Assembly: GCF_020745735.1 (NCBI RefSeq)
Contig: NC_083447.1
Location: 16,944,035-17,008,034 of the forward strand
Direction of reading: 5' to 3'
DNA from: Hemiscyllium ocellatum
Lineage: Eukaryota
DNA: 64,000 nt
Shown: one piece after another, positions 5,157 to 62,169 of the stretch
How positions within the stretch are numbered: position 1 is the first letter of the stretch
Layout: every line of letters begins with the position of its first letter
Position numbers and translations under genes: made by a program
The notes under the pieces: model-generated
Told to the model about the DNA's origin: nothing
Databases searched by the model: none
Seen by the model: the letters and a program-made list of their open reading frames with translations, nothing else

Positions 5157-5468
<312 letters not shown>

Positions 5469-12761: not shown

Positions 12762-12878
<117 letters not shown>

Positions 12879-27622: not shown

Positions 27623-27659
27623 ATGGCTGGGTGTTGGTGTGGAGACACCAATGAAATGG
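27623..27659 (+). CDS. Unannotated gene, putative first coding exon (MAGCWCGDTNEM)
   Basis: ATG with +4 G; donor G|gttagt in phase 1 matches the next exon; start could lie further upstream. Confidence 0.5.
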
Positions 27660-28287
27660 GTTAGTTCTTTACTGAACAGAGGAGGTTGCCTTGAGAATCG
27701 ATGGGTTTCGGAAACGGTGAGAGGTTTGGGCTGCAGGATTGGGAAAAGGAGCAGAGGGAAGCTGAAGGGGCCATCTTCTTTTATGAAATGAGTTGCTGTG
27801 ATCTTTCTGAGAGGTGGTGGGAGCAGATCCAGTGATAACATTCACAAGAACATTTGGACACGCGCTAGAGGTTGACAATGTCAGGTCAGTGGGACAAGCG
27901 TTGGGTGGAGACGAGCTTTTCAAATGCCTCTTTCAAACAGTTGGCAGGAAACAAATCTGTACATGTCTGTACGATTCTGTGATTGAACGTGCAGGACACG
28001 GGTCTGGGCTGAAGCAGATGAAGAAAGCATGTTTTGACTGGAAGGGTCTTAACTTTTCAGCTGACCTGTAGCTGTTCGGCGCTGATTCTAACATAGATGT
28101 TCATGGGGCTAACATTCCCCACAACTCAAGAAAGGGGATAGAATAATAGAAGCATGAATGGCCACAGCACAGGAGGCCATTCAGCTCGTCATTTCTACTA
28201 CAGCTTGCTATAAACACAATCAAGTCCCACTTCCACAACCTTGTCCATTGACGCCACTGAGTCTTTTTCTCTTCAGATGCTTATCAA

Positions 28288-28991
28288 GTGAACCTGCCTC
28301 CCCCCACACTCTCAGTCCATTCCACACCCTAACCCCTCGAGTGAACCTGCCTCCCCCACACTCTCAGTCCATTCCAGACCCTAACCCCTCAAGTGAACCC
28401 ACCTCCCCCCACACTCTCAGCCAGTACACTCCAGACCCCAACCCCTTGAGTGAACCCACCTCCCCCCACACTCTCAGACAGTCCCTTCCAGAGCCTAACC
28501 CCTTGAGTGAATCTGGATCAGTGGTGCTGGAAGAGCACAGCAGTTCAGGCAGCATCCAACGAGCAGCGAAATCGACATTTCGGGCAAAAGCCCTTCATCA
28601 GGAATAAAGGCAGGGAGCTGGAAGCTCACTGATGAAGGGGTTTTGCCCGAAACGTCGATTTCGTTGCTCGTTGGATGCTGCCTGAACTGCTGTGCTCTTC
28701 CAGCACCACTGATCCAGAATCTGGCTTCCAGCATCTGCAGTCATTGTTTTTACCCTCGAGTGAATCTGCCTCCCCCCCACACTCAGACAGTACACTCCAG
28801 ACCCTAACCCCTCTAGTGAACCCACAGCCCGCACACTCTCAGACAGTACATTCCAGACCCTAACCTCCTAGTGAACCTGCCTCCCCCACATTCATAGAGA
28901 GTACACTCCAGACCCTAACCCCTCTAGTGAACCTGCCTCCCCCCACATTCTCAGACAGTACACTCCAGACCCTAACCCCTCGAGTGAACCT
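28288..28991. repeat. Minisatellite (about 50-55 bp unit, gagtgaacctgcctccccc...ccagaccctaacccctc) interrupted by a palindromic element
   Basis: About four units on each side of the insertion. Confidence 0.9.
28512..28752. mobile_element. Palindromic Penelope-derived element with a hammerhead motif in each arm
   Basis: 90-bp inverted arms 28512-28601 / 28629-28718 with 3 mismatches; CTGATGAAGGG(C/G)TTTTGCCCGAAA(T/C)GTC. Confidence 0.85.
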
Positions 28992-29509
28992 GTGACGTCC
29001 GCTTGTCGGTCCAATTTCCAGTGGGAACGGTTTCTCCCTCTTCACCCTTCGAGACCCCAGACCACTTTGAATGTATTGATCAAATCTCCTCCTAACTTTC
29101 TCTTGTCCAAGGAGAACAGCCTCAGCTTCCTTTTGACCCACTTAAGCCAAAGTCTCTCATCCCTGGAGCCATTGTTGGAAATCTGTGCTCACACTCTGAA
29201 CAGATTCATGAACTAGCTTTCAAATATCACGTATAAAATTGGTCACAACATTCCAGTCGAGGCAGACCACTGGCTAACGGGTTCACCCATAACCTCCTGG
29301 TTTTTTGCAGCCCCTGGCTGTATTTATAAAGTCCAACATTCTGTCTGCGTTCTCAATGGTCTTCTCAACCTACCCTGCCAATTTACAGACCATTGCATGC
29401 CTGTCAATTCAACTGTTTCTGAACTCTTACAACTTAAATCATCTCGATACCGATTCCAACGTACTGAAGGGAAACATTATCGCTGGACTGTTCATCCAGA
29501 GATCAGAGT

Positions 29510-29840
29510 CCTCACTTTCTCCCTGTTCATTCAGAGACCCAGGAAACATTCTTGGGACCTGGGTTTAAATCCCTCCAGGACAGATGGTGGAATTCGAATT
29601 CGATAAAAATGTAGAATTAAGAGTCTAATAATGATCGTGAATCGATTGTTGGCAAAACCCATCCGGTTCACGAACGTCCTTTAGGGAAGGAAACTGCCAT
29701 CCTTACCTGGTCTGGCCTACACGTGACTCCAGACCCACAGTAAGGCAGTTGGTTCCTAACTGCCCCTGAGCCATTAGGGATGGGTGATAAATGCTGGGTC
29801 TCGTCAGTGACCCCCTCATCCCAGAAATTGAAAACGATGA
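29510..29840 (+). mobile_element. Shark SINE family 2
   Basis: gggtttaaatccc B-box-like motif; ttagggaaggaaactgccatccttacctggtctggcc core. Confidence 0.75.
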
Positions 29841-30200
29841 CCAAGAACAAGAGGACTCAGATTTAAAGTGATTTGCAAACTAAGTGTGGTAGATGCAGGT
29901 TCAATTGGAACAGTCAAGCTGGCCATTGGACAGAAATAATGTGCAAGGACATGGGGGAGAAAGCAAGAGATTGGCAGGCGATAATCGGATAAATAGGAAG
30001 GGGGTGGGGCTAGGGAGAAGGTAGCCAAGAGTACAATAGGTGGATGGAGGTGGGGATAAAGGTGATAGGTCAGAGAGGAGCCTAGGCAATAGTGAGGCTC
30101 ATTCGAAGAGCTGGTGCAGGCTCCATAGACCAATGACCTCCTTCTGTGCAGTAACAAGTCTGTGATTGGATGGCATAATATAACCCAGTTTCTCCAACAG

Positions 30201-30297
30201 CGAAGAACAATAAAGAGGAACAACCCAACGGAGCAGCGAGTCCGGGTGAAGGGTCGTCACAACCGAATAGGAAGATAAAGGAGAGGAAACGGAAAAG
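30201..30297 (+). CDS. Unannotated gene exon (AKNNKEEQPNGAASPGEGSSQPNRKIKERKRKR)
   Basis: tctccaacag|...AAG|gtatca, 97 nt, phase 1 to 2, open frame in a CpG-retaining unique island. Confidence 0.65.
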
Positions 30298-30569
30298 GTA
30301 TCATCAAGACAGCAGAGGTCAGGCACAACTGTCCGGGTCTGTGACGTAAATTCTCAACTCACCTTGTGTCCTAGTTCCCAGCTGCCCCCCTATTCCGGAG
30401 GCCTGGTCAGCATTGCCCCCTCTCCCCACCCTCAAGACCCTGCTCTTAAGATCTTGCTAACAATTGCCCAAGGCAACTTGTCCCTATTTCATTCACCCAG
30501 AGTTAGTCACCCTGACAGTTGGAGATCAGCAGCAGGAGGGACAAGAATAAAGAATAGACTCCCAATGCA

Positions 30570-31100
30570 GAGGCCTCAGGCTATTACTCCGGAAACATGG
30601 GTTCAAATCCCACCAGGCCAGATGCTGGACTTAAAATATCATTGTTAAATCTGAAACTGAAAGCCATCCGCAAGGACAGTGACCATAAAGCTCTCACCAA
30701 TTGTAAAGGCCCATTTGGTTTGCCCGTTTAGGAAGGGAAATTTGCCGTTCTTACCCAGTCTGGCCTACATGTGACTCCCAGAGCCCCCCAGCAATGGTGA
30801 CACAGTGACTCAATGGTTAGCACTTTGCCGCACAGTACCACAGACCTGGGCTTTCCATGGGTTTCCTCCGGATGCTCCGGTTTCCTCCCACAGTTCAAAG
30901 ATGTGTAGGTCAAGTAGATTGGCCATGTTAAGTTGCCCAAAGCATCCTGGAACGTGTGGGCTAAGTGGATTAGCCATTGGGAATGCAGAGTTAGAGGAAT
31001 AGAGTTAGGGGTCTGGGCCTGCTCTTCGGGGGGGGGGGGGGTTGGGGGGGGTCAGTGTTGACTCGATGGGCTGAATGGCCTTCTTCTTCACTGTGGTTCA
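30570..31100 (+). mobile_element. SINE family 2 fragment joined to a degenerate HE1-like SINE
   Basis: Both family cores present in tandem. Confidence 0.7.
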
Positions 31101-31897
31101 ACGTGACTGATTCCTACCCACTCACTGAAATGGCCGAACAATCCACTCGGCCCCAGGGCAGAGAGGGACAGGCAATAACCATTGGGAGAATGCAAGTGAT
31201 GCCCTGTGAAAGCATAAAGAGAAGAGATCAATTCTTTAGCACTTCCCAACCCCCCCCCCCACCCCCACCCTCCACCTCTTTCTCTCTCTCTCTCTATCTC
31301 TCTCTCTCTCTCTCTCTGCTGGCCTGTCATTTAATTGGTTGATATCTTTATGGTGACTTCTTCCTCCACTCTGTGCTGGTGCACACCAACTCACACATTC
31401 CTTTACTTGCTGGGACCTTCACATTGTTGACAAAGTAAAGGAAGCTCTGGCATTTCGCTAACACCTTTCATTCCCCTCCAACGTTCGACTATTCTACTCT
31501 GGGCCTGAGGTTGGTAGATGTTGCATGAATTTGTTGGTGTCAGCAAATCTGACCTTTTACTTAAGCATACAGGCGGTAGGAGAGGCAGGCACAGTAGATT
31601 CATTTAAGATACACCTGGACAGACACATGAGTAGGTGGGGAGCAGAGGGATACAGATCCTTAGGAATTGGGCGACAGGTTTAGACAATGGTTTTGGATCG
31701 TCCCAGGCTTGAAGGGCCGAACGGCCTGTTCCTGGGCTGTAAATTTTCTTTGTTCTAAGACACTAATCACATTCAGGTTGAGACTTCACCGCTACCAGGA
31801 GTTTGTTACAGAGAGTCCGAGCAGTCACATGATCTTCCATCACTTGGCAACGATGCTGTCAACGATCTTGTTCACATCTCACACTAACGCTTTACAC

Positions 31898-32345
31898 CAT
31901 GTTAAAAATCACACAACACCAGGTTATAGTCCAACAGGTTTAATTGGAAGCAAACTAGCTTTCGGAGCGTCGCTCCTTCATCAGGTGATAGTGGAGGGCT
32001 CAATCCTAACACAGAATTTATAGCGAAACTTTGCAGTGTGATGTAACTGAAATTATACATTGAAAGTCTGTTAAGCCTTTCATCTGTTAGAATACAGTGA
32101 TAGTCTCATTTCTTTCATGTGTAAATCACAAAACCCTTCTTTTTAAAGTTGCATTCTCGGGTTAGCTGCTAACAATGGTGATAGCTAGACAATATGTTGA
32201 AGGAGAAAATGAGGACTGCAGATGCTGGAGATCAGAGCTGAAAATGTGTTGCTGGAAAAGCGCAGCAGGTCAGGCAGCATCCAAGGAGCAGGAAATTCGA
32301 CATTTCGGGCACAAACCCTTCTTCAGGGAATATGTTGAAGGGTCG
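31898..32345 (-). mobile_element. Penelope-derived fragment (family B, hammerhead 31953-31987) with nested family A element 32204-32328
   Basis: Reverse complement CAC-CTGATGA-A-GGAGC-GAC-GCTCC-GAAA-GCTA; nested copy flanked by 13-bp duplication AATATGTTGAAGG. Confidence 0.8.
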
Positions 32346-32638
32346 ACATCTTTACACGATAGATACCTCAATGCACTCCATTGCTAAGAAACTCATTTTT
32401 GAACGTACAGTCCCTCCCTGCTCTATGTGTCATCCAATTTGCACACAGCAGTCTCCCACAAAAGCAGTGCGATAACGGTTTTACTTCTGCTTTTTTCTAA
32501 ATCGAATCAAAGGAAAAACAAACAAAAAAGAAAAAAAAACAATAAAGAAAACCAAAAAGAGCAAATATCTTCCCTGGAAAAGTGGGGGAAGGAAAAGAAA
32601 CTCCCCTCCTCCAAAACACAGAGTGTATCCGCAGGGAC

Positions 32639-32912
32639 ACACTGACTGTGGTCTAGCCAGCACAGTCTCGGTACACTGACTGCGGTCTAGCCAGCACAGT
32701 CTCGGTATACTGACTGTGGTCTAGCCAGCACAGACTCGGTACACTGACTGTGGTCTAGCCAGCACAGTCTCGGTACACTGACTGTGGTCTAGCCAGCACA
32801 GACTCGGTATACTGACTGTGGTCTAGCCAGCACAGACTCGGTATACTGACTGTGGTCTAGCCAGCACAGTCTCGGTACACTGACTGTGGTCTAGCCAGCA
32901 CAGTCTCGGTGC
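32639..32912. repeat. 34-bp tandem repeat, 8 copies, each with an internal hairpin
   Basis: Unit actgactgtggtctagccagcacagtctcggtac; GACTGTG/CACAGTC inverted repeat. Confidence 0.95.
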
Positions 32913-33021
32913 ACTAAACTGACGAGATTCTAAAGCTCTTGGTTATATACTATTTTTTTCTTTCTCACTCCCACACTGCCGCCTAACCACAGTAGTGCTT
33001 ATATTTTCCCCAGCCCCCATG

Positions 33022-33056
<35 letters not shown>

Positions 33057-33704
33057 TGAGACACAGTGAAAGACAATAGCTGTATCAATCTTTATTCAAT
33101 TTCCATCACCAGGAAAAAGGTGGCCAGTGAAAAGCAGTGCCCATCTCATCAAAGGGCAAGAGAGAATGGTTTTATTAAGGAGCGTCAATTGAAGACTGAT
33201 ATGAGGAGGAATTATTTCTCTCAGAGGATCGTAAGCCTTTGGAACTCCTTGCCCCAGAGAGTTCTTGTGTATGTTTAAGGCTGAGTTAGATAGACTCTTG
33301 ATCAGTCAGGGAATCATGGGATAGGGAAAGGGTAGGAAAGTGCACGTGAGGGATCTGGGATCAACTGGATCAGAATGGTGCAGCAGGCTTGAGGGGCTGA
33401 ATGGCCTACTCCTGTTCCCATTTGCTATGGTCTTATAATCCGGTTCGATGAAAAAGTCTCGGGGCTGGCTGTGCCGAGCATGAAGTTGATGAATTTTAAT
33501 GCTCTCCCCTCTCCCCACCCTTCCCAACTTCCACCTTCTCTTCTAATTCATCTGGGCCAGAAAATTCTGGAACATCATCTCCTTCCGTCTCCCCTCCTTC
33601 CAACAAGATAAAGGGTTTAGGGGATATTTAACCACATCAAAGGGGCTATACAAATACACATCGTTGTTGGTTGCCACAAGTACAAAAGGGAAAGAAGGGT
33701 AGCA

Positions 33705-34395
33705 AAGGGGAGTGGGGCACTGAGGGGAGGGGGCAGTGATGGGAGAGGGGAGGGGGCACTGAGGGGAGTGGGCAGTGATGGGAGAGGGGAGGGGGCACTG
33801 AGGCGAGGGGGATGATGGGAGAGGGGAGGGGGCACTGAGGGGAGTGGGCAGTGATGGGAGAGTGGAGGGGGCACTGAGGCGAGGGGGATGATGGGAGAGG
33901 GGAGAGGGCACTGAGGGGAGTGGGCAGTGATGGGAGAGTGGAGGGGGCACTGAGGCGAGGGGGATGATGGGAGAGGGGAGGGGGCACTGAGGGGAGTGGG
34001 CAGTGATGGGAGAGTGGAGGGGGCACTGAGGGGAGGGGGATGTTGGGAGAGGGGAGGGGGCACTGAGGGGAGTGGGCAGTGATGGGAGAGGGGTAGTGAT
34101 GGGAGAGGGGCAGCGATGGGAGAGGGGCAGCGATGGAGAGGGGAGGGGGCACTAAGGGAAGTGGTGCAGCGATGGGAGTGGGCACTGAGGGGGGGAGGCA
34201 GCGATGGGAGAGGGGAGGGGGCACTGAGGGGTGAGGGACAGCGATGGGAGAGGGGAGGAGGCACTGAGGGGTGAGGGGCAGTGATGGGAGAGGGGAGGGG
34301 GCACTGAGGGGTGAGGGCAGCGATGGGAGAGGGGAGGGGGCACTGAGGGGTGAGGGGCAGTGATGGGAGAGGGGAGGGGGCCGCTGAGGGGAGTG
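33705..34395. repeat. G-rich minisatellite (about 39-41 bp unit)
   Basis: gggcactgaggggagtgggcagtgatgggagaggggagg variants; source of the Pro/Ser-rich ORFs. Confidence 0.95.
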
Positions 34396-35070
34396 GAGAA
34401 TGGGATGACTATGGAAGAGCTGAAACACAGGGCACAAAATACATCCTGGGTATGTACATCTGGAGTCAGGTGTAGGCCGGACCAGGTAAGGATGGCAGAT
34501 TCCTTCCCTAAAGGACATTAGTAAAGCAGGTGGGTTTTTCCCACAATTGACATTAGACTCTGCTCATTTAATTCGAGATTATTCACTGAATTCAAATTCC
34601 ACCATCTGCTGTGACAAGATTTGAAGTTGGGTCCCCAGAACATTACCTGAGTCTCTGGATTAGCAGCGATAATACCAGCAATAATTAGCAGCGCAGTGAC
34701 AATACCATTTGGTCATGACCTCGGTGTGTTCTCTCAGAGATTCACTGAGATATTTCTTGAAGTGTAATGCCCAGAATTGACGACAACTTTCTGGCTGAAG
34801 TCTAACCAGTAATTTATAAAGATCTGGAAGCATCTCCTTGCTTTTATATTCTATTTTAAACACAAATATATCCTTCATTTCATTTTAACCATCTTAGTAA
34901 CGTGCCCTGTCATCTTAAAATGTTACACAAAGGTCTCACTGCTCCTCAATATTTTTCAGTGGGATTAAGAAGTATTTTAGGCGAGAGTCAAGTTACAAGA
35001 GCAGCTCAATTAACAACATAATCGTCTTTTTTTAAATTTCAAATTAATTACCAACTTTTCCTTCTTCTAG

Positions 35071-35137
35071 AATCCGACTTAAAATGCCCCCTGGCAGGAA
35101 ACGGGAGCCTGCTGTGGATAGTGAGGGGCAGGCCCAG
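35071..35137 (+). CDS. Unannotated gene exon (IRLKMPPGRKREPAVDSEGQAQ)
   Basis: ttttccttcttctag|...CAG|gtgaga, 67 nt, phase 2 to 0. Confidence 0.75.
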
Positions 35138-35276
35138 GTGAGACCCTTCCTCCTCCTGACACTCCTGGGGCAAGGCACTAGGTCACGTTCAGAGCTCAGA
35201 CAGGTCTGAATGGGGTTGGGTAAAGCTTTAGCTTCCTGGCAGAAACAAACAGTAGGAAATAACTGGCTTTTTGATG

Positions 35277-36557
35277 CCTTCCACCCTGACCTCAAGTTCA
35301 CCTGGATCATCTCGGACACCTCCCGCCCCTTCCTGGACCTCTCCATCTCCATTTCCAGTGACTGACTAAACATAGACCTCTGCTTCAAACCCGCCGACTC
35401 CCCCAACTACCTGGACTAAGCCTCCTGTAAAAACTCTATCCCTTACTCCCAAACCCTCCGCCTCTGCCACATCTACTCCCAGGAGGAGCATATCCACTCC
35501 AGAACATCCCAGATGCCCTTCCACTTCTAGGACCGCAATTTCTCCACCTACATGGTCAACAATACCCTCCAACCCATCTCCTCAACTTCCTGCAGCTCCA
35601 ACCTTGAAGTCACCCCTCTCAACGCAACAAGGATAGAACCACCCCCTCCCCGGTCATCTCCTTTCACCCCACCAACCTCCAGATACAGCTCATCATCCTC
35701 TGCCATTTTCGCCATCTACAGTCATGACCACACCACCAGAGACATATTTCCCTCCCCAACCCTATCAACATTCCATAGAGATCATTCTCTCCGTGACTCC
35801 CTCGTTAGGCCCACGCTCCCCACCAACCCCCCCCTCCATTCCCGGCACCTTCCCCTGCCACCGCAAGAGGTGTAAAACCTGCCCCCTCCCCTCCATCCAT
35901 GAGCCCAAAGGATCCTTCCGCATCCAGCAGAGATTTTCCTGCACCTCCCAACACCTCATCTACTGTATCTGTTGTTCTTGATGAGTCTCCACTACCTTGG
36001 GGAGACATGAAGCCAACTTATGGAATGTTTCAGGGAACATCTCTGGGATACATGCACCCAATAACCCCACCGCCCTGTGGCTGAACACTTCAACTCCCCC
36101 TCCCACTCCACCAAGGACATGTAAGTCCCGGGCCTCCTCCACCACTAAATCCTAGCCACCCAACACCTGGAGGAAAAACGCCTCATCTTCCACTTTGGGA
36201 CCCTCCAACCACACAGCATCAGTTTCAATTTCACCAGTGTCCTGATCTCCCCTTACCCCACCTCATCCCAGACCCAACCCTCTTGAACTGTCCCACTTGT
36301 CTAACTTTCTTCCAAACCTATCCATTCCACTATCCCCTCCGACCGATCACTTTCACCACCCAAAGTCATCCACCTATCCTATTCCCACTACCTTCCCCCA
36401 GCCCCAACTTCTCCCATTTACCTCTCGCCCCCTGGCCCCACTCTCCTCCTGCTGCACCCCTCCCCCACATTCCTGATGAAGAGTTTACCCCTGAAGCATT
36501 GACTCCTGCTCCTCGGATGCTGCCTGACCAGCTGTGCTTTTCCAGCATCACCCTTTG
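35277..36557 (+). mobile_element. Penelope-like element remnant (RT end, GIY-YIG, 3' UTR with decayed hammerhead at about 36470-36500)
   Basis: FHPDLKFTW; GTFPCHRKRCKTCP...QQRFSCTSQHLIYCICCS; its 3' end matches the family A palindromic elements. Confidence 0.85.
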
Positions 36558-36942
36558 TGATTATGGCTTTCTTCATGCACACTTGGAAATTGGATCCATG
36601 TCAACCACGATGACTGAATTGGGAAAGCTACTTCCTAATTGGAACTTTTAGATATTTTTACACCATTTATCCGCTCCCTTCTTTCTCTCTCTCGGTATAT
36701 AGCTCCTTATGTCTCACTATGTTTCTCTCTCTATATATATATTTATCCATCTCTCCTTATCTCTCACTATCTCAGTCTCTCCTGATATGTCTCCCGCTAA
36801 ATAATTCTCACTATCACTCTCGAAACGCCTCTTTCCCTCTGTATTTCTTTACCATAATTATGATGAAATGTCCTTCCAGTAACGTATGTTGGAGTCAACA
36901 TAAGCAAGAAACCTTCCTTTCTGAATGACATGCTGTTCACTT

Positions 36943-37226
36943 GTGGGTGGCATGATGGCACAGTGGTTAGCACTGCTGCCTCACAGCGCCAGAGACCTGG
37001 GTTCAATTCTCGACTCAGGCGACTGACTGTGTGGAGTCTGCACGTTCTCCCCGTGTCTGCGTGGGTTTCCTCCGGGTGCTCTGGTTTCCTCCCACAGTCC
37101 AAAGATGTGCAGGATGGGATGGATTGGCCATGTGAGATTGCCTATAGTGTTGGGGTATGGGTGGGTGGCGGGTCGGTGTAGACTTGTTGGGCCGAAGGGC
37201 CTGTTTCCACACTGTAGGTAATCTAA
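36943..37226 (+). mobile_element. HE1-like V-SINE, full length
   Basis: A/B boxes, V-domain and tail; possible duplication TCACTT. Confidence 0.9.
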
Positions 37227-37255
37227 TCACTTCCATTTCTTATGTTCCTTTTCAG

Positions 37256-37351
37256 GTTTTACACCCCCGCTTATCCCACTTTCGAAAGTCCATTGATAAA
37301 ATGATGGTTTTAACACAGGAGAAAATAGCCACTCAGAGCAGTGAGATACAG
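37256..37351 (+). CDS. Unannotated gene exon (VLHPRLSHFRKSIDKMMVLTQEKIATQSSEIQ)
   Basis: ttccttttcag|...CAG|gtaatg, 96 nt, phase 0 to 0. Confidence 0.78.
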
Positions 37352-37417
37352 GTAATGATGTGACCAATCCCGGCTGCTAAATTCAGCACCAAACAACTTG
37401 TTCCAATCTAGCACAAC

Positions 37418-37895
37418 CAGTCATTGTGTGATTGGTCAGTCACTGGAGGATCTGTCGGTCACTGTGTGATTGGTCAGTCACTGTGGGATCTGTCACTGTG
37501 GGATCTGTCAGTCAGTGTGAGATCTGTCAGTCATTGGGTGATCAGTCACTGTGGGATCTGTCGGTCACTGTGTGATCAGTCACTGCAGGATCTGTCGGTC
37601 ACTGTGTGATTGTTCAGTCACTGTGTGATCTGTCGGTCACTGCGGGATCTGTCAGTCACTGTGTGATCAGTCACTGTGTGATCAGTCACTGTGTGATCTG
37701 TCGGTCACTGTGGGATCTGTCAGTCTCTGTGTGATCAGTCACTGTGTGATCTGTCGGTCACTGTGGGATCTGTCGGTCACTGTGTGATTGTTCAGTCACT
37801 GCGGGATCTGTCAGTCACTGTGTGATCAGTTACTGTGTGATCGGTCACTGTGTGATCGGTCACTGTGGGATCTGTCGGTCACTGTGGGATCTCAG
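37418..37895. repeat. Compound VNTR (gtcactgtgtgatc / gtcactgtgggatctgtcg variants)
   Basis: Interleaved units of about 15 and 19 bp. Confidence 0.93.
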
Positions 37896-38760
37896 TTCCT
37901 GAGTGATCTGCTGGACACTGCATGTTCTGTCTTTCACAGCAAGTCTGGCCAATAGACCCCGGTGCCCTGCTTTGCTTTATCTATGTTACTGGAGTTTAAG
38001 TGAGGTTTTGAGCCTGAGGGATCTGATACCTTAGAAGACCCAGCAAAGATCATCTACCATTTCAACCATGGAAGTGCATTCAATCTGATGCTAATCTGCC
38101 ATCCACCAGCCAGCCTCATGCACTGGGCCCCCATCAGCTGTAACCGAGGCATCGATAGCAACAGGCATTTCAGCTAGGGAGGGCATCACAGCCATAACCT
38201 AATCTCACCAACGTCCCAAATTAGAGCAGCAAGATCTGCCCTTAATTTTATATACTCTTCTAACCAGTCAACTTGTGGGTGAGGTGAGTGTTAGGGTTAG
38301 CCCTTGTCTTAATCTTAGCACCTGGATGCTCTTGCTTACGGCAAGGAGGCTAATTCCTGAGGGAGGGGGGGAGCGGCAGTAGGGTCCTCCGGGGAGGTCC
38401 ACAGCTCATCTCTCCCTGCCTCACAGTCTTCAACAGTTGCTCCAAACGGCCTCCTGTTTTCAATTACAAGTTGTCAAATTCTCATTGTCCTTCTCAGTCT
38501 ATGTCCTTCTCATCATTATCCCACCACACCCACCTCCCTCAAACTTTAGCAACCTCTCAAAGCCTTTGAATTTGACCCTTTTCTTGATGATGTTTGCTAA
38601 CTACCTCTCCCCTCCCACGTGACCTGTCGCTCTGGTCTCTCCAACCCACCTTTTCCAGAACTACATTTTTCCTAAGGCCTCCAATCAAGGCAGTGAAAGC
38701 GATATCAGTCACAGATAGCTTTCAATCCTCATCTCTAATCTCTCTCTCTCTCTCTCTCAG

Positions 38761-38852
38761 CATCGGAAAATGGTGCTGTCAGACACAATGAGGAAGAAAT
38801 TGCAAAACACGCCGATACAAAATCTCCAGAGAAAGCTGCATGTCAAGGACAG
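38761..38852 (+). CDS. Unannotated gene exon (HRKMVLSDTMRKKLQNTPIQNLQRKLHVKD)
   Basis: ctaat branch site plus (tc)n tract, ag|...CAG|gtgaga, 92 nt, phase 0 to 2. Confidence 0.78.
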
Positions 38853-39669
38853 GTGAGAGATCAGGGTGGGTCACGGTCAATCCGCTGCACTGGGCTGGCC
38901 TGTGATGTCCCTAATATGGCACCCCAGTGCCCAGTTGTGTCAAAACACGTGCTTTCCAGGAAGATCCTCAAAGCCTCCCTGAAAGAAACGGGATGATTCT
39001 CGCCGCTGGGTGGGAATCTGTGAGACTGTCCAACGTGGAGAAGATGCAGCAGTGGAGGTGCCAACCACCTCCAACAGTCCCGGGAGGGTGAAAACCTGAG
39101 ACGTCCTCTCCCTATGCCCACTTCAGCAAACACCAACCCACCTCCTACCACCCCCACCCTCCCACCGCCACGTGTGACAGAGTGGCTGGCCCAGTTGTGC
39201 ACTGTTTACACACTTCAGGACCCATGACCCCAGGGCGGTAGAAATTCATCCTTGATCCCAAGAGACCGCCAAACAGGCCTAGATTAGAGAAGGTTAGAGA
39301 AGGGGCTAATTATGACACCAAGTTCTTGCTATCTGTGGGGGTACAGTCAACCACAGGATAAGAGAAACATGTGATTTTGCAAAGGATCAGACAATTAGGC
39401 CTGACCAGGCTTTCAGAAAATAAAAGGTGGCTCTGGGATTGGCTACACCAGTGTGTAGACCCACGGATAATGTGGAGAGAGTGGATTAGCAGAGTGAGGC
39501 TCTCCTGCAATTCTCTGCCCGCAGGCAGCTCCTACCCACTGTACCACCTCATTCCTCCATGGGACAGGTAAAGGGGCAAGTTCCAAACTGGCAGCAATTT
39601 GTCAAGCCAGTTATACTCCCTCCACCCGAAAAGGAGTCAGGGTTGCTATGGCAACGTAGACTTTTTTTG

Positions 39670-40220
39670 TGTGTTGGTGGACATCATGTGCTCCTTCTCC
39701 TGGGATATTCGGGCTTAAACATAAACTCTTGTTTTTTTTTCTTTTTTAAATGTTTTTTGTCTGTTTTATCCCCCCCCCCCCACATTCCCGCCTAACTGCG
39801 GTAGTGCTTATTTTTCCTCGAGCACCCATGGTGTGTGTGTGTGCAGGTGTGAGACACAGTGAGAGACACAAGGTGCACGAATCTTTATTCAGTTCTCACC
39901 ACCAGGAAAAAAGGAAATACCCGAGTGGCCAGTGACAAGCAGTGCCCTTCACATCAAAGGGCAATGCTGTGTGATCAAACAGTGAAGGGGAGGGCAGGGA
40001 CTAAATCAAAATAGAGTTGGAGGGGGAAATAATGCACTCCACTCCCTGCGGCGCCCACATCTCCCTGAACAACTCCAGGGTGTTGGTGGACACCATGTGC
40101 TCCTTCTCCAGAGATACTCGGGCTCTAACGTAACCGCGGAAGAGGGGCAGGCAGTCGGCCCTAACGACCCCCTCCACGGCCCGCTGCCTGGACCTGTTTG
40201 TGGCCAGTTAACGTACACAT
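39670..40220 (-). mobile_element. Tx1-like LINE 3' end (another family); 3' UTR also at 32945-33160
   Basis: RARVSLEKEHMVSTNTLELFREMWAPQGVECII read on the minus strand; shared UTR block. Confidence 0.65.
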
Positions 40221-40429
40221 TTTAGTGTAGCCGTGTCATTGGCTGTGTTATGAATGCACCGTCCTTGCTCATTAGGAACTCAACCTGGAGCTTCTGGTTC
40301 AGAGGCAGGGACACTACTCCTACTCCACAAGAACTCCTCATCAGAGTGAAACACAATTGCTATTAATCATTCACAGGGCTATAGAGATCAATGGGTGACA
40401 TGTGTGTACAACATTCTTTCTTTCCATAG

Positions 40430-40504
40430 CGTGCAGATCCCTGCTCATCTGAGTCCAAACGATTCTGGACTACCTGAGGAACTTCTCAAAGATGACACCC
40501 TCAG
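40430..40504 (+). CDS. Unannotated gene exon (SVQIPAHLSPNDSGLPEELLKDDTL)
   Basis: ttctttctttccatag|...CAG|gtatga, 75 nt, phase 2 to 2. Confidence 0.75.
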
Positions 40505-40568
40505 GTATGAGGAGCTCTGATCGCTGAAGTTTAGGTTTATTCATGTGGTGGTCAAACCCTGGGCTGTT

Positions 40569-40984
40569 CATAGAATCATAAATGCCTAAATTGAGTGTGG
40601 ACGCAGGCCATTCAGCCCATTGAGTCCACACTGCCCCTCCAAAGAGCATCCCTCCCAGCCCCAGCCCCAGCCCCAGCCCCAGCCCCAGCCCCAGCCCCAG
40701 CCCCAGCCCCAGCCCCAGCCCCAGCCCCAGCCCCAGTCCCAGTCCCAGTCCCATAACCCTGGATTCCCCATAACTAATCCACCTAGCCTGCACATCCATG
40801 GACACTATAGGTAATTTAGCAGGGCCAATCCACCTAACCTACACACCTTTGGACTGTGGGAAGAAACCGGAGCACCCAGGGGAAAGCTATGAAGACATGG
40901 GGAGAATGTGCAAACCACTCAAGGCTGGAATCGAACCTGGGTCCCTGGCGTTGTGAGGCAGCAGTGCTAACTACTGAGCCACTG
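40569..40984 (-). mobile_element. HE1-like V-SINE with internal (CCCCAG)n expansion (40653-40752)
   Basis: SINE head, V-domain and tail flank the hexamer array. Confidence 0.88.
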
Positions 40985-41852
40985 AAAATGGAAAAGATGC
41001 AGATTAAAGTTGGCTTTGCAGTGCTCTATCGCCACAGTGTATTGCATTCCAACTCCCACAATTTGAGTTGAGACTAACTGACATCCTCAAAGTTAACACA
41101 GGCACATGGATTGATGAGCCACAGAGAGACTGGTACATAATATTTACTGGTAAACACACTAATGAGGTTAGTATATGCAATGAGCAGAAGATGGTGACCA
41201 GTTATATTCCCAAGCGAATAAGTCAGCGCTTTTTATGCAAATAATTTTTCAGAATGGAAACAGACATTTCATAAAATCCCACCATGGCAGCTGATGAAAG
41301 GGATAATGACAAACCAAAACTAATGTTTGTAGTTTGTTGTGAAAACCCAATGTCCCATGGAGGAATGTGGTGGTACAGTGGGTAGGAGCTGCCTGCGGGC
41401 AGAGAATTGTAGTGAAAACCCTAACTGACCCCTGAAATGGCCCAAAAAAGTCCCTTAGTTCAAGGGCAATTAGGAATAGGCAATAAATGTTGGACCTTTT
41501 CAGCGATGCCCATATCCCATGAAAGAATTTTTTTTTTTTAAAATCTTACTACTTTAAGCAAGTTGTAGTGAGGTCAGCCAGGTGCGCCTAATAGAAGAGG
41601 AATTTCCTGACTGGGGCTGTTAACCTGATCCAATCAGGGAGCCCTGGCTGACAGAGATAAACAGGAGGATCAAAGATTCTGTTCACTCTGAGAGCACCAA
41701 CCCAGGTCAAGTACTATGCCCATGTAAATAAAGGGTGACTTGGTGACAGGATGCTGGCCTCTGTGGAAGTATTTAACGAACCCTCTGCACAATTCTGCCA
41801 CTCACTCCTTCTCTGAGAGAGATTGCTAACGAGGTCCAGAGCTTTCGGTATA

Positions 41853-42174
41853 CATAGAATCCCTACAGACTGGAAACAGGCCCTTTGGCCGAACGAGTCC
41901 ACACCAACCCTCAAAGAGTAACCCACCTAGACCCATTCCTTTACCCTATTATCTTAAATTTACCCCAGACTAATACATCTAACCTACACACCCCCATGGC
42001 CAATCCACCCTAATCTGCACATCTTTAGACTGTGGGAGGAAACCAGAGCACCCGAAGGAAACCCACATGGACATGGGGAGAATGTGCAAACTCCACACAG
42101 ACAGTCGCCTGAGGCTGGAATTGAGCCCGGGTCTCTGCCGCTGTGAGGCAGAGGTGCTAACCACTGAGCCACCC
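41853..42174 (-). mobile_element. HE1-like V-SINE
   Basis: Full-length reverse-complement copy. Confidence 0.9.
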
Positions 42175-43280
42175 ATTTGTCCCCCTTTCCCTTGAAAGGT
42201 TGCTGCCCATTCTTCTCAGCTAATTCCACGTGAGGCAAGTTATGGGGGAAGTAGTGTAGGGTATGCCTGGGGTTCCCAGGTGGTTCCAAAGATATGCTTA
42301 GGAGGAGGTGTCTCCCTGCACCCATAAATCAGAACTATTACAACAGGGAGTGCTCGAGGCAGCTAGGGCTGACTGTCCTGCTCTTGCTAATAATGGTCCC
42401 AGGACAAGACGAGACCTCCAAGGTCATTCCTTCTTTGTGACTCAGTTGCTTCTGATTTAGAATATTAGTTCAGTTCTGGGCACTGCTCAGGAAGGATATA
42501 ATGATCTTGGAAGAGACAAAGTGTAGATTCACTCGAACTATCCCAAGCATTAAATTCTAAGAGTGATGTCGTATGGTTCGTTTCATCTGTGTGTGATTAT
42601 GTTAGTCTGAGAATTGATCCTTAACCACTTGTTTGATTGCTTAAGCCTATGGATGGAGCGAGGGAGTTAAATACTGACCCCAGACTGGGAATATATCACT
42701 CCAAGATGGCGGTAGTGGAGTTGCAGCGTATTGAACCCAGGGTTTGTCTAGATCTATCTGCTTTTTTTTTTGTGTTTTGCTTTTGCTTTTCCTTTCTGTT
42801 TTTTTTTCTTTCAAGTCTTTTATCTTTCCTCCTGGGTTGCAGTGGCATTGGGGAGAGCAGGCCCCACGCAGAATGGCAGAAGAACATGGCAGCACAGGCC
42901 TGAGGAGTGGCGGGATCGAGTCAATGTTAAAGGAGGAGGTATCTGGTGATGGCGGCGGACACGGCTCTATCCCAGCCTGCGGTCTCCCAGCGAGCAAGGA
43001 GCAGATCCCAGGCTTAATACCTCCCCCACCACAGTTCAAACTGACAGGCTGAGCCAAGGCTCCAGATCTGCAGCTAGGCCCGGGCGTCTGATGGCTGAGG
43101 CAGCGGAGGCAGCGAGGCAGAGTCCTAGCACAAGATTCTGTGGCGTCGATGGCAGATGCATTGGGTGAGGTTGGTTTAGCATGAACTCATGGAGGCTGCA
43201 GTGTTGGTGGAGGCAAGATAGTGCCAGAGAATGGTGATGACTCTTGTTTCCAGCGGTGTGGCACTGCATGCCAATGAGGG

Positions 43281-43830
43281 CATCAGAAAGTAGCCTATTC
43301 CCAACTTGACCACCGAAGATAAGGAATGAACCAATAGAAGTGTTGATAGTGATACGAGGCTAAATCAAGAGCCACCATTCTCTTGGGTGGGCCAAACAGG
43401 GAATGAACATTAAAAATCAAGTCCGAGGTGATGTCAGGAAGCACTTCTTCACACAAAGAGCAGTGAAACTCCAGAACTGGCTTTCCCAAAAAAGCTATTG
43501 AGGCCTGGGGGAGTGGACGGTATTTTGTTTAATTCAAAGTTTTGAAACCAATATTGATAAATATTTGCCAGACAGGTACTTTTAGAGTTATGGAGCCACG
43601 GTAAGTAAATAGAGTTGAGATGCAGATCATCTGTGAAATCATTGAATTCAGGAAGGCTTTTGGGGCCCAATGACCTCTTCCTACTTCTCAGGGAATTTTA
43701 ATGTTAATTCCCTGTTTGGCCCACCCAAGAGAATGGTGGCTCTTGATTTAGCCTCGTATCACTATCAACACTTCCATTGGTTCAGTCCTTATCTTCGGGA
43801 CTCAAGTTGGGAATAGGCTACTTTCTGATG
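43281..43830. repeat. 135-bp inverted repeat pair flanking a CR1 3' fragment
   Basis: 43281-43415 vs 43696-43830, about 6 mismatches by eye. Confidence 0.92.
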
Positions 43831-44178
43831 TGTAAAATGAGTTTGTACACACTGATATCCAGTGGGAACTTCACATAGATATCGCAGAATTGTAACAACA
43901 TGGAAGATCATTTGACCCATCATGCTTTGTATTGTCAAGTGCCAATGCCCTGCCTATTACCCATCTCTGCATATCATCTCTGTTCCAATATCCATCCAAT
44001 GCCCCTCTTGAAAGCCTCAACTGAACCTGCCTCCAACACATTTCCAGGCACCACATTCCATAATCACTCGCTATGTGAAAACATTTTACTTCTTTAGGAC
44101 ATCATTTTAAATCTATGAACTCTCATTCTCGTTCCTTTTGCAAGTGGGAACAGCTTCTCCCTATTCACTTTATTCAGG

Positions 44179-44551
44179 TGTGCAAAGTTAAAAATCACAC
44201 AACACCAGGTTATAGTCCAACAGGTTTATTTGGAAGCACTAGCTTTCAGAGCGCTGCTCCTTCATCAGGTGGTTGTGGACTTTAAGATCGTAAGACACAG
44301 AATTCATGGCAAAAGTTTACAATGTTCTGGGATTTACATATGAAAGAACTGAAACCAACATGGTCATTCTAAAAGATGAGAGACTCAACAAACAATCCAG
44401 GTCTTTTTCAATGTATAATTTCAGTTACATCACACTGTCAATGTTTGCTATAAATGCTGTGTCTTACACTCTTATTCTCCACAACCACCTGATGAAGGAG
44501 CAGTGCTCTGAAAGCTAGTGGATCCAAATGAACCTGTTGGACCATAACCCA
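44179..44551. mobile_element. Penelope-derived inverted element (family B) with hammerheads at 44237-44271 (-) and 44485-44521 (+), inserted in CR1
   Basis: CCAC-CTGATGA-A-GGAGC-AGT-GCTCT-GAAA-GCTA-GTGG and its inverted partner; CR1 sequence resumes on both sides. Confidence 0.85.
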
Positions 44552-45300
44552 CTCATGATTTTGTAAAACTCGATCAGATCTCCTCCCAGCCTCTTCACGC
44601 CAAGAAGAACATTCTTGTAAATTGCTTCTGCAGTCTCTCTCCAATGCATCTGCATCCTTCCTATCGTCTGGTGTAACAACATTAATCCGGGGTGGGAATT
44701 CTCAGTGATATTTAATGTACTATATTTGAAGGGTTCTAAGCATATCAGTGGTATCTCACTGACTGTGTATGTCACAACCAGCAGACTCGGGCACAGATCA
44801 GTGTCAATTCGGAAACCCCTGATGTGCTTGGCTCTGTTGCCCATCGCCAATGCCAGCTGGGGCTCAGTGAATGATGCACTGCCATCTACATTGTGATGGT
44901 TGTAGCTTCAACTCCTGCGCTGGAGACTTCAATACAAATTCTACACTGATACTAGAGTGCAATATTGTAGCATTGGCTGAAATGACATCTTTTCAAAAGA
45001 TACCTTAAAATGAGGCTCTGGACTCGCTGGTGGATAAAAGATTTTTTTCACTCAATCTAGGGAAGATCTGGGCAATATCTTTCCATCACTAAAGTAGACT
45101 ATCAGGAAATTTATTTTATTGTTGGTTTCGGGAGTTTTCTGCCTCCAAATTGGCTGCATCTACATTAATATAGTGAGTATAATTACAAGCTGACTGTGAA
45201 GCATTTGTGAAAACCACAATAAGAGCATAAGACAGAGGAGTGGAAGAAGGCCACTTGGCCCATTGAGCCTGTTCCATCATTCAATAATCCTTAAATGATT

Positions 45301-45985
45301 TGTTATGAAGATGTGGGTGTACTTTAAGTGAGAGAAACACAACAGAACTACCAGCCACAGCACCAAGTGTTCTCAATAAGGTAACAATGGAACACTTGGT
45401 CAAACAACTTGATTAGTTCATTGCCTGGAGACAAAAACAAATCTGAATTCAGCCAATCAGTTTAAATTATACCCCGAAAAATACCAAACTCCAATCCAGT
45501 TTGAATTGAGTATATTGACTATCTTAAGAGCCAATGACACAATCCGATGTTTTGGGGGTATAAGACCGGGGAAAATTGAACAATTGAGAGGAGAACTGAC
45601 AAGCTCAGTATGTAAACAGACTGCCTGAAAATAGCGCTCTTAAAAGATATCTTTTCAATCAGTAACCGGTGATGCAGAAATTCCTAAGAAGAAGAAAAGA
45701 AGACACAGGAAGATCCAAATAGAAACACGAAAGCTCCCTGGTTTTGAGATAAGAAGGGTGGTTTTGTAAATCTTAATTGGGAGTCTTATCAGACTAGTAT
45801 TATAAAAGGGAAGGTAAATAATGATTAGTTAATTATTCTCTGGTATACTTTAAGAATTAAAGTTGTTAATTTTTATCTTTAAAAGTTCTTGGCCACTCGG
45901 ATTTTCACAGATTACTGCACGGGGTAAATCTTTCTTCTGTTGCTGGTTTTAAATTAAGCAGGAGGGTTTACCCCGTGTTGTAACA
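45301..45985 (+). mobile_element. Solo LTR
   Basis: TGTTA...TAACA termini; 4-bp duplication GATT (45297-45300, 45986-45989). Confidence 0.85.
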
Positions 45986-46044
45986 GATTGTATCTCTGCA
46001 TTTATGGCCAGATTTTAAGGCGCACACGTCTTCCTCTTTTCCAG

Positions 46045-46153
46045 CCATACCTTTGAAAATCTGATGCTAATGGTCATGGACGATGATGATGATCAGATGG
46101 GAAGTGCTGCACAGGGAATAACTGAGCTGCACCCTTCTCAAACACACCCCTGA
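46045..46153 (+). CDS. Unannotated gene last coding exon (SHTFENLMLMVMDDDDDQMGSAAQGITELHPSQTHP*)
   Basis: ttcctcttttccag|, phase 2, TGA at 46151-46153; donor AAG|gtaaca after 46176. Confidence 0.7.
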
Positions 46154-46661
46154 TGAATCCCGCCTCAGGGTGAAAGGTAACAGTGCTGCCGGATAATGCT
46201 AAACATTGAAACATTTCTTTCTTTTGAAATGTAAATTAAAATGGTGTTCGAACAGAGTGACTGCCTATCACCCTCAAATGATCCCTGTATAAGCACAGAC
46301 ACCATCTGTGACAATCCAGACCAATGGGAGCATCTGAGTCTGCATGGGCCCTTACACTGACAGGCCGGGGCTGGGGAGGCTGGGGTTTGAAGGGCGGGTG
46401 AGTTGCTGGAATGAACAGGCATAGGGAGGCTGAGTGGATGGACGCTCAAGGGCACTGGGGTGACGACTAGGCCAGGGAGCCTGGTCAGGAGGCTGGTGAT
46501 GAGCTGAGCCTAGGTGTGGGTGCCTGGAAGACTGGAGTTGAGGTGGGGGATAGGGGAGTGCTGGGACGAGGGGGAGGTGGCTGTGGAAGCTGGGGCTGAT
46601 GAAGTGGAGCTGTTCCCCTCTCTTGAGTTGGTCTACTCAATCACTGGCCCACAGGTCAGAG

Positions 46662-49669: not shown

Positions 49670-50502
49670 TCAATTGGCAATCCCACTGTTGCTCACTGGT
49701 GGTTCACGTCTGAAGATCACATCATAAGTCAACTGGTAGCCATCATTGTACACGTAGAGTTTGTGATTGGTTGGATTGTAGTTAACACTTGGCAGTTTTT
49801 CCAGGATCTTATCCATTGTTATAGAAATTGACTCTTCCTTCCCAGTTTTGGTGTCAAATGCATAGAAAATTTCCTCAGACTGTGGTTGCACAGGCCGAAT
49901 TGCATACAGAACCCCACATATTATAAAAGTATTGGACACACTAGGTTTGTAAAGCTTGGTGACCCATGTCTTTTCCACAGTGAAGGTGGCCTCATTAATC
50001 TTACCAATAACAGCATTCCCGGCATTTGCTTCAGGGCAGTAAATGACCCAAAGGCCAGATTCATCCACAGCAAAGTCTATGTCTTGGTATGTGACGCCCA
50101 CATAAGAATACTTGTTATTGTAAGCTGCATCTTTAAGAGTCTGGCTCTGTACTCTGCCTGTGTCTATGTGATACCTGCACATGTCTCTGGTATTGTAACA
50201 GTTGTAATACAAGAAATTATCGTACAAAACCATTCCACTTCCCTGTGCTATGAATGAACTTGGAAATGATTTGGTTATTCCATTTTTGTTAAGTAGCATA
50301 TCATTAAGTGAATAATAGACAATGAAGGAATACAGTGTTCGTGCATCTGTGTAGAGTGGTGCCACCCAATATAGCTCCTTTTTATCAGGGGGTGGAATTG
50401 AATCTTTGCCCCATGCTCCATATCGATAACCAAATCCATTATAGTTCAGTTGTATTACGGTAGGTTCGCTCAATTGGAGAAGGCCATTATGATCACAGCT
50501 TC
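49670..50502 (-). CDS. OLFM4: Olfactomedin-4-like exon 5 (OLF domain)
   Basis: GSCDHNGLLQLSEP...YGAWGKD...GSGMVLY...DIDFAVDESGLWVIY...FIICGVLY...YNPTNHKLYVYNDG; acceptor cag at 50505-50503. Confidence 0.95.
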
Positions 50503-51299: not shown

Positions 51300-51450
51300 C
51301 GAAATCAATGGGAGGAAGGGTTGGTGGGGCTTGATTCTTCTCACAGTCAGCGAGCTGTTTCTTCAGCAGAGTAATTTCTTTGCGTATTGCCAGAGCGTTG
51401 TGTATGTCAAATGATTCCAGCTCATTGACAATACGGGATATATTTATAAT
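51300..51450 (-). CDS. OLFM4: Olfactomedin-4-like exon 4
   Basis: IINISRIVNELESFDIHNALAIRKEI...PPIDFG, 151 nt, cag / gtgagt. Confidence 0.93.
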
Positions 51451-52324: not shown

Positions 52325-52568
52325 GGCTGAAAATGTGTTACTGGTTAAAGCACAGCAGGTTAGGCAGCATCCAAGGAACAGGAAATTCGACGTTTCGGGC
52401 CAGAGCCCTTCATCATCCAACAAACAAGCGTACAGAAGTTCCTGGAGAAGGGCTTATGCCCGAAACATCAAATCTCCTGCTCCTTGGATGCTGCCTGATC
52501 TGCTGCGCTTTTCCAGCAACACATTTTCAGCTCTGATCTCCAGCATCTGCAGACCTCACTTTCTCCTA
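52325..52568. mobile_element. Palindromic family A element (both hammerhead cores mutated)
   Basis: Inverted arms gctgaaaatgtgtt.../...aacacattttcagc. Confidence 0.85.
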
Positions 52569-62168: not shown

Positions 62169-62169
62169 C

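What the first reader, a model, noticed from the sequence alone, without database searches (positions are those of the whole stretch)
27623..46176. Hidden 7-exon gene of about 190 aa between RYR1 and the olfactomedin gene
Seen: seven short unique-sequence islands among transposons (27623-27659, 30201-30297, 35071-35137, 37256-37351, 38761-38852, 40430-40504, 46045-46153). Each has a GT donor, the six downstream ones have a pyrimidine tract plus AG, and their phases chain 1,2,0,0,2,2 into one open frame: MAGCWCGDTNEMAKNNKEEQPNGAASPGEGSSQPNRKIKERKRKRIRLKMPPGRKREPAVDSEGQAQVLHPRLSHFRKSIDKMMVLTQEKIATQSSEIQHRKMVLSDTMRKKLQNTPIQNLQRKLHVKDSVQIPAHLSPNDSGLPEELLKDDTLSHTFENLMLMVMDDDDDQMGSAAQGITELHPSQTHP*. 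I do not recognise the family. Inference: the CxC N-terminus could be palmitoylated, the basic cluster could be an NLS or membrane-binding patch, and the centre looks helical with an acidic tail. The first exon is the least certain.
Basis: partly seen in the sequence, partly recalled or inferred. Interest (0 to 1): 0.85.

Follow-up and report, generated by a model that had tools for sequence, protein, structure and literature searches.

The report
Small unannotated shark gene beside RYR1
A real, single-copy, small protein-coding gene of unknown family lies between the ryanodine-receptor and olfactomedin-4-like genes. Five of the seven proposed exons are backed by a matching predicted protein in another shark order; the first two exons, and so the 190-residue length, remain unproven.

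Summary
The seven intervals have GT/AG borders and phases 1,2,0,0,2,2, and they translate to the quoted 190-aa ORF.

Exons 3-7 are well supported:
- A phmmer search with exon 4 alone against 1.84 billion proteins found one hit, a 120-aa NCBI 'uncharacterized protein LOC144511078' of Mustelus asterias.
- That protein aligns without gaps to the end of exon 3 through exon 7, 83/120 identical.
- Similarity stops at the predicted donors of exons 4 and 5.
- Its only match in this 3.98-Gb genome is this locus.
- Its amino-acid differences are more conservative than simulated neutral change (P=0.004).
- The splice sites of exons 3-7 rank in the top 0.2-2.7% of sites in the region.

Exons 1-2 are not supported. 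Their splice sites are mediocre, and 27 internal and 41 first-exon alternatives fit equally well. The Mustelus protein starts inside the exon 3 equivalent. An ATG at 35084 would give 141 aa.

No Pfam, PDB, AlphaFold DB or ESM Atlas relative was found. AlphaFold2 predicts one long helix and a disordered acidic tail. Verdict: a real orphan-like shark gene of modest interest.

The parts
27623..27659 (+). Proposed exon 1 (ATG plus 12 codons): unverified
   Evidence: The ATG context has C at -3 and G at +4. The donor scores 4.7 bits, only in the top 10% of GT sites. The island is single copy. The orthologue gives no support, and 41 alternative ATG-first exons join exon 3 in frame. CpG observed/expected is only mildly raised here, and similar values occur at many other places in the region.
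30201..30297 (+). Proposed exon 2 (Lys/Arg-rich): unverified
   Evidence: The acceptor is in the top 7.6% and the donor in the top 14% of sites. 27 equally good frame-compatible candidates lie upstream of exon 3. The island is single copy. The only point in its favour is that its purine-rich 3' end continues the basic cluster that exon 3 begins (sequence).
35071..35137 (+). Exon 3, holding a candidate start codon at 35084-35086
   Evidence: Acceptor and donor are both in the top 0.3%. Its last 14 codons are the single best match to residues 1-14 of the Mustelus protein among 17,937 stop-free 42-mers: 12 minimum nucleotide changes against a mean of 25. The ATG at 35084 has A at -3. The island is single copy.
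37256..37351 (+). Exon 4 (N-terminal part of the long helix)
   Evidence: 26/32 residues are identical to P0001. phmmer E is 1.9e-08 against 1.84 billion proteins. Similarity ends at the donor. Splice sites are in the top 0.4% and 2.7%. The exon is single copy.
38761..38852 (+). Exon 5 (C-terminal part of the helix, basic)
   Evidence: 25/30 residues are identical to P0001. Similarity ends at the donor. Both splice sites are in the top 0.3%.
40430..40504 (+). Exon 6 (linker and start of the acidic region)
   Evidence: 18/25 residues are identical to P0001. The tblastn match covers 40425-40502. Splice sites are in the top 0.5% and 2.1%.
46045..46153 (+). Exon 7 coding part (hydrophobic patch, five Asp, species-specific tail, TGA stop)
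   Evidence: 9/19 residues are identical over the part shared with P0001. The acceptor is in the top 0.2%. The exon is single copy. The Mustelus protein ends 2 residues after the Asp run, while this one runs 19 residues further.
46235..46240 (+). Candidate polyadenylation signal ATTAAA, 82 nt after the stop
   Evidence: Sequence scan. No RNA data are available to confirm the 3' end.

Best explanation
This is a genuine, single-copy, protein-coding gene on the + strand. It lies 3' of the RyR1-type ryanodine-receptor gene and is convergent with an olfactomedin-4-like gene. It is conserved between two shark orders but has no recognisable family.

Shown: Inferred, structure: translation most likely starts at the ATG at 35084 in exon 3, giving 141 aa, because the only known orthologue also starts inside that exon. 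Since exon 3 has a very strong acceptor, at least one further 5' exon must exist.

Inferred, function (low confidence): the product is a small, mostly disordered adaptor.
- It has one amphipathic alpha-helix of about 55 residues (exons 4-5, net basic) that would dock onto a partner.
- It has a conserved C-terminal acidic-hydrophobic motif: [LI]PEELL.DDTLS..F..L, then a four- to five-residue hydrophobic run, then five Asp.
- From memory of published consensus motifs, that tail resembles SUMO-interacting motifs and acidic activation or LC3-interacting motifs.
- If the basic stretch around exons 2-3 is translated, it would act as a nuclear localisation signal.
For: 1. The exons chain exactly into an ORF with canonical sites.
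2. phmmer with exon 4 alone against 1.84e9 proteins gave one hit, P0001 (E 1.9e-08). This is NCBI 'uncharacterized protein LOC144511078 [Mustelus asterias]', 120 aa, gene span 9.7 kb.
3. P0001 aligns gap-free to model residues 54-171. Identity by exon is 5/14, 26/32, 25/30, 18/25 and 9/19.
4. By tblastn the similarity breaks off at the predicted donors of exons 4 and 5, with stop codons just beyond.
5. In this genome P0001 matches only this locus, and the exon islands tested are single copy.
6. The end of exon 3 is the unique best match to the first 14 residues of P0001 (P about 6e-5).
7. The 27 differences in the 105-residue core have a mean BLOSUM62 score of +0.48, against -0.36 +/- 0.32 for simulated neutral change at the same identity (P=0.004). 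Identity is also uneven between exons (Fisher P=0.00014).
8. The splice sites of exons 3-7 rank in the top 0.2-2.7% of 1811 GT and 2361 AG sites.
9. The window's olfactomedin exon is closest to Chiloscyllium (91%) and 68% identical to Mustelus. The two species therefore belong to different shark orders (plus textbook taxonomy).
10. AlphaFold2 on P0001 gives a helix at residues 9-62 with pLDDT above 90 and low confidence elsewhere.
Against: - No transcript evidence was obtained.
- Only one annotated relative exists in 5.8 billion proteins, although several other sharks' NCBI proteomes are in that database.
- The Chiloscyllium punctatum olfactomedin-4-like gene has no called gene within 10 kb.
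- P0001 is itself a computational model.
- Synonymous and non-synonymous rates could not be compared, because no Mustelus DNA was served.
- If shark neutral rates are very slow, 69% identity alone is weak evidence.
- The functional reading rests on motif resemblance and a single-sequence structure model. The helix has no clear heptad register.
Confidence: 0.72

Rival explanations
1. One reading: seven coding exons and 190 aa, starting at the ATG at 27623, with a Cys-x-Cys N-terminus and a long polybasic nuclear localisation signal spanning the exon 2/3 junction.
For: The frame is open through exons 1-3. Both islands are single copy. The Lys/Arg-rich end of exon 2 continues directly into the Lys/Arg-rich start of exon 3. 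The top-0.3% acceptor of exon 3 requires some upstream exon. Computational gene models often lack 5' exons, so the shorter Mustelus protein is not decisive.
Against: The exon 1 donor and both exon 2 sites are ordinary, in the top 8-14%. 27 internal and 41 first-exon alternatives fit as well. The orthologue starts in the exon 3 equivalent. There is no distinctive CpG or promoter signal at exon 1. There are no RNA data.
Confidence: 0.25
2. It is not a functional protein-coding gene. It is a non-coding or decaying transcript, or a prediction artefact, whose open frame survives in two slowly evolving genomes by chance.
For: No RNA support was found here. There is no annotated counterpart in other shark proteomes and no called gene next to the Chiloscyllium olfactomedin-4-like gene. 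About 30% of neutral simulations at this identity also keep the frame free of stops.
Against: The alignment is gap-free and frame-preserving across five exons between two orders. The replacements are conservative (P=0.004) and conservation differs strongly between exons. All eight splice sites are exceptionally strong. The gene is single copy and not transposon-derived.
Confidence: 0.1
3. It is a highly diverged member of a known family, for example related to the N-terminal part of complex I subunit NDUFB3.
For: The weakest of leads: phmmer and a profile search against PDB sequences list NDUFB3 at E 0.55-0.58 over about 35 residues.
Against: The E-value is not significant. Pfam shows no hit to any family. 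NDUFB3's C-terminal transmembrane helix (my recollection of its sequence) has no counterpart in the sequence here. Fold search gave nothing.
Confidence: 0.03

Closest known systems
NCBI 'uncharacterized protein LOC144511078' of Mustelus asterias (P0001, 120 aa, assembly GCA_964213995.1)
   Same: It is colinear with the end of exon 3 through exon 7, without gaps, and 83/120 residues are identical. The hits are reciprocal and unique. Both have the same long basic helix, the PEELL.DDTLS motif and the five-Asp run. P0001 lies on the same 63-Mb record as two olfactomedin-4-like genes.
   Different: The Mustelus model starts inside the exon 3 equivalent, 3 codons after this window's ATG at 35084, and ends 2 residues after the Asp run. 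The window's frame runs 19 residues further. Neither protein has a known function.
Small disordered adaptor proteins with C-terminal acidic-hydrophobic motifs (SUMO-interacting motifs such as the Daxx C-terminus, acidic activation domains, LC3-interacting regions)
   Same: A four- to five-residue aliphatic run is followed directly by five Asp at or near the C-terminus. An upstream F-x-x-L lies in an acidic and Ser/Thr context. Both features are conserved between the two sharks. This resemblance is recalled from the literature and was not tested.
   Different: There is no sequence homology to any such protein. In this window the aliphatic run is Met-rich. Binding was not tested.
NDUFB3 (complex I B12 subunit)
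   Same: About 12 of 35 residues match over the exon 5 region.
   Different: The match is not significant (E 0.55). There is no Pfam hit, and NDUFB3's transmembrane helix (recalled, not checked here) has no counterpart in this protein. It is not a member.

Membership tests
Orthologue group of Mustelus asterias LOC144511078 (uncharacterised) | Significant, colinear protein similarity over most of the length | tested here: met
   Exon 4 alone gives E 1.9e-08 against 1.84e9 proteins. The alignment is gap-free with 83/120 identical. tblastn matches exons 4, 5, 6 and 7 in order.
Orthologue group of Mustelus asterias LOC144511078 (uncharacterised) | Reciprocal unique best match (one-to-one orthology) | tested here: met
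   P0001 matches only this locus in the 3.98-Gb genome. The window's exon 4 and the profile A3 find only P0001 in the protein databases.
Orthologue group of Mustelus asterias LOC144511078 (uncharacterised) | Conserved gene neighbourhood (RyR1 and olfactomedin-4-like) | tested here: inconclusive
   P0001 and two olfactomedin-4-like genes lie on the same 63-Mb Mustelus record, but none is within 10 kb of another. No coordinates or DNA were served.
Orthologue group of Mustelus asterias LOC144511078 (uncharacterised) | Same intron positions and phases | not testable with these tools
The only indirect evidence is that similarity to the spliced protein ends at this window's donors.
NDUFB3 / NDUF_B12 | Significant match to the family profile or to solved members | tested here: not met
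   Pfam gave no hit for P0001 or the exon pieces. The PDB match has E 0.55 only.
Stathmin/SCG10-type palmitoylated helical proteins (considered because of the CxC N-terminus plus long helix) | Stathmin-like domain | tested here: not met
   No Pfam family matched at E up to 1-10. The CxC motif sits in unverified exon 1.
Canonical coiled-coil dimer | Heptad register of hydrophobic residues; predicted self-association | tested here: inconclusive
   The best register places a hydrophobic residue at only 8 of 20 a/d positions. The homodimer prediction gave no verdict.

The most novel reading that the evidence does not exclude
A shark-restricted orphan protein-coding gene that standard annotation misses in most shark genomes. 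It encodes a protein of about 140-190 residues with a single long helix and a conserved acidic-hydrophobic, SUMO-interacting-motif-like C-terminus, and it has no relative outside cartilaginous fishes.
Probability: 0.45. Interest if true: 0.4.

Novelty: new member of a known kind. Interest (0 to 1): 0.3.

Why it matters
It shows that a careful reading of raw sequence can recover a small, fast-evolving gene that homology-driven annotation seems to miss. Only one of the shark proteomes in the database carries a counterpart. If it is confirmed as expressed, it would add a taxonomically restricted gene to the shark catalogue and give a two-order alignment from which to study its origin. The protein has no domain, no known partner and no link to a standing question, so the finding is useful for annotation rather than surprising.

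Tried and rejected
RNA evidence:
- The first run search listed 'RNA?' contig runs holding 4-6% of the words of 37256-46176. Those shares track each run's size, and the same runs held 0.00 of the exon 7/UTR words, so they are not evidence of expression.
No junction could be tested.

Homology:
- No Pfam family matched any exon piece, and P0001's only Pfam row was an insignificant ApoO match (E 0.24, far below its cut-off).
- ESM Atlas: no usable hit.
- PDB sequences, single and profile: only NDUFB3 at E about 0.6, rejected as noise.
- Foldseek against AlphaFold DB/Swiss-Prot: E above 4.
- Word-indexed searches with P0001 and with profile A3: only P0001 itself.
- Alignments A1 and A2 misplaced the exon 3 and exon 7 pieces and were dropped in favour of A3.

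Other checks:
- Homodimer prediction on residues 5-75 of P0001, two copies: no verdict. It counts neither for nor against.
- CpG observed/expected as a promoter marker: values around exon 1 (0.50-0.59) are mostly above the regional 95th percentile (0.52), but similar values occur at many other places and there is no CpG island.
- Mustelus and Chiloscyllium DNA could not be fetched because the files were too large, so dN/dS and an intron-position comparison were not possible.

Full report
**Observation.** Each of the six donors begins with GT. Each of the six downstream exons is preceded by a pyrimidine tract and AG. The cumulative lengths give phases 1,2,0,0,2,2. The joined 573 nt translate exactly to the 190-residue sequence quoted in the finding, ending at a TGA at 46151-46153.

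**Context.**
- Ryanodine-receptor exons lie on the + strand. The pore exon, with the GGGIGDE filter, is at 5157-5468 (Ion_trans hit). The last coding exon ends at 12875 with ...[11 protein letters not shown].
- An exon at 1381-1620 matches solved RyR1 chains better than RyR2 or RyR3 (47 against 37 and 34 bits).
- On the - strand an olfactomedin-domain exon lies at 49673-50539 (PF02191, E 2.5e-76). Its relatives are named olfactomedin-4-like. The closest named one is from Chiloscyllium punctatum at 91% identity; Mustelus asterias is at 68%. The window therefore comes from an orectolobiform-like shark.
- The candidate gene is convergent with this olfactomedin gene. An ATTAAA lies 82 nt after its stop.
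- Reverse-transcriptase fragments lie on the - strand at 22.7-23.8 kb, between RyR1 and the candidate.

**Is it more than chance?** Three lines of evidence say yes for exons 3-7.

1. *An orthologue exists.*
   - A phmmer search of exon 4 alone (32 aa) against 1.84 billion representative proteins returned exactly one hit, P0001 (E 1.9e-08). P0001 is a 120-aa protein that NCBI calls 'uncharacterized protein LOC144511078 [Mustelus asterias]'. Its gene spans 9.7 kb on a 63-Mb record.
   - P0001 aligns without a single gap to model residues 54-171. Identity is 5/14 (end of exon 3), 26/32 (exon 4), 25/30 (exon 5), 18/25 (exon 6) and 9/19 (exon 7).
   - In a tblastn of P0001 against the window, similarity runs up to the predicted donors of exons 4 and 5 and is lost in the intron beyond, where stop codons follow. 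Exons 6 and 7 are matched at the predicted places.
   - The weakly similar N-terminus of P0001 was tested separately. The last 14 codons of exon 3 need a minimum of 12 nucleotide changes to encode P0001 residues 1-14. That is the unique best value among 17,937 stop-free 42-mers between 13 and 47 kb, whose mean is 25.
2. *The gene is single copy.* P0001 matches only this locus in the 3.98-Gb genome. The exon islands tested are single copy. None of the exons has another copy in the window, while 34% of the gene span does. The exons are therefore not transposon pieces.
3. *The splice sites are strong.* I used a simple position-weight matrix for vertebrate splice sites, with frequencies recalled from the literature, so it is approximate. 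The eight sites of exons 3-7 rank in the top 0.2-2.7% of all 1811 GT and 2361 AG dinucleotides between 13 and 47 kb.

**Selection.** No Mustelus DNA was served, so dN/dS could not be computed. As a substitute I mutated this window's own coding sequence at random until it reached the observed identity.
- The 27 observed replacements in the 105-residue core have a mean BLOSUM62 score of +0.48, against -0.36 +/- 0.32 in the simulations (P=0.004).
- 25 of the 27 replacements need only one nucleotide change.
- 70% of the simulations acquire a stop codon.
- Conservation differs strongly between exons 4-5 and the flanking parts (Fisher P=0.00014).

Together with the absence of any indel across five exons between two shark orders, this points to purifying selection on a protein.

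**The 5' end.**
- The exon 1 donor (top 10%), the exon 2 acceptor (top 7.6%) and the exon 2 donor (top 14%) are ordinary.
- In the 22 kb upstream of exon 3 there are 27 internal-exon candidates with sites at least as good as those of exon 2 and a frame compatible with exon 3. There are also 41 ATG-initiated first-exon candidates.
- No CpG island marks exon 1, and its mildly raised CpG content recurs at many other places.
- The Mustelus protein begins inside the exon 3 equivalent, three codons downstream of an ATG that this window has at 35084, with A at -3. Starting there gives a 141-residue protein.
- Exon 3 has a top-0.3% acceptor, so some upstream exon must exist.

I put the exact seven-exon model at about one in four.

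**What the protein looks like.**
- No Pfam family matches any exon piece, and P0001 gets only an insignificant ApoO row (E 0.24).
- The ESM Atlas gives no usable hit.
- PDB sequence and profile searches list only NDUFB3 at E about 0.6, which I treat as noise.
- Foldseek against AlphaFold DB/Swiss-Prot gives nothing.
- AlphaFold2 on P0001 predicts one helix over residues 9-62 with pLDDT above 90. The rest has low confidence, with short helices in the acidic region.
- The helix is net basic (exons 4-5, +8) and the tail is acidic (exons 6-7, -11).
- There is no clean heptad register, and a homodimer prediction gave no verdict.
- Both sharks conserve [LI]PEELL.DDTLS..F..L followed by a short aliphatic run and five Asp. 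From memory of published consensus motifs, this resembles SUMO-interacting, acidic-activation or LC3-interacting motifs. That is a lead, not a result.

**Distribution.** Two word-indexed searches of 5.8 billion proteins, one with P0001 and one with a profile including this window's exons 4-6, found only P0001. The same database holds NCBI proteins of many other sharks and rays. The Chiloscyllium punctatum olfactomedin-4-like gene closest to the window's has no called gene within 10 kb. Here the candidate's last exon lies 3.5 kb from the olfactomedin gene. The gene therefore seems to be missed by annotation in most sharks, so 'hidden' is a fair description. The searches were limited to proteins of 66-210 residues, so longer models would escape them.

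**Expression.** None could be shown. Putative RNA contig runs held 4-6% of the words of a 9-kb stretch, but those shares track run size, and the same runs held none of the exon 7/UTR words. This is the main gap in the case.

**Verdict.** This is a real, conserved, single-copy small gene of unknown family. It is the orthologue of an annotated but uncharacterised Mustelus gene. Exons 3-7 are well supported, and exons 1-2 (and hence the 190-aa length and the CxC idea) are unproven. It is a new member of a barely known kind, useful for annotation, and of modest interest.

Noticed in passing
window 44238-44519 (last intron, both strands): This stretch of about 280 nt matches Rfam MIR8562 on both strands (60.7 and 23.7 bits, far below the gathering score of 211). 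A match on both strands suggests a long hairpin or inverted-repeat element rather than a hammerhead. No Rfam family, hammerheads included, reaches its gathering score anywhere in the window.
   Followed up: partly
window 22720-23821 (- strand): Two open frames match reverse transcriptase RVT_1 (E 1e-7 and 3e-7). They are fragments of a retroelement in the 15-kb spacer between the RyR1 stop and the candidate gene.
   Followed up: partly
window 33706-34396, 37418-37910, 32639-32915, 40654-40753: Introns carry several tandem arrays: a G-rich 39/76-bp minisatellite (about 18 copies), a 19-bp array (about 28 copies) starting 67 nt after exon 4, a 34-bp array (8 copies, 95% matches), and a (CCCAGC)n run 150 nt after exon 6.
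   Followed up: no
window 49673-53127 (- strand): The olfactomedin-4-like gene has a coiled-coil exon at 52804-53127 and an OLF-domain exon at 49673-50539. The family is multi-copy in sharks: two or three 'olfactomedin-4-like' or 'olfactomedin-like' proteins each were listed for Chiloscyllium punctatum, Mustelus asterias and Scyliorhinus torazame.
   Followed up: partly
window 60993-62940 (- strand): Three long open frames (244, 153 and 179 aa) have no Pfam hit at E 0.001. That was not examined further.
   Followed up: no
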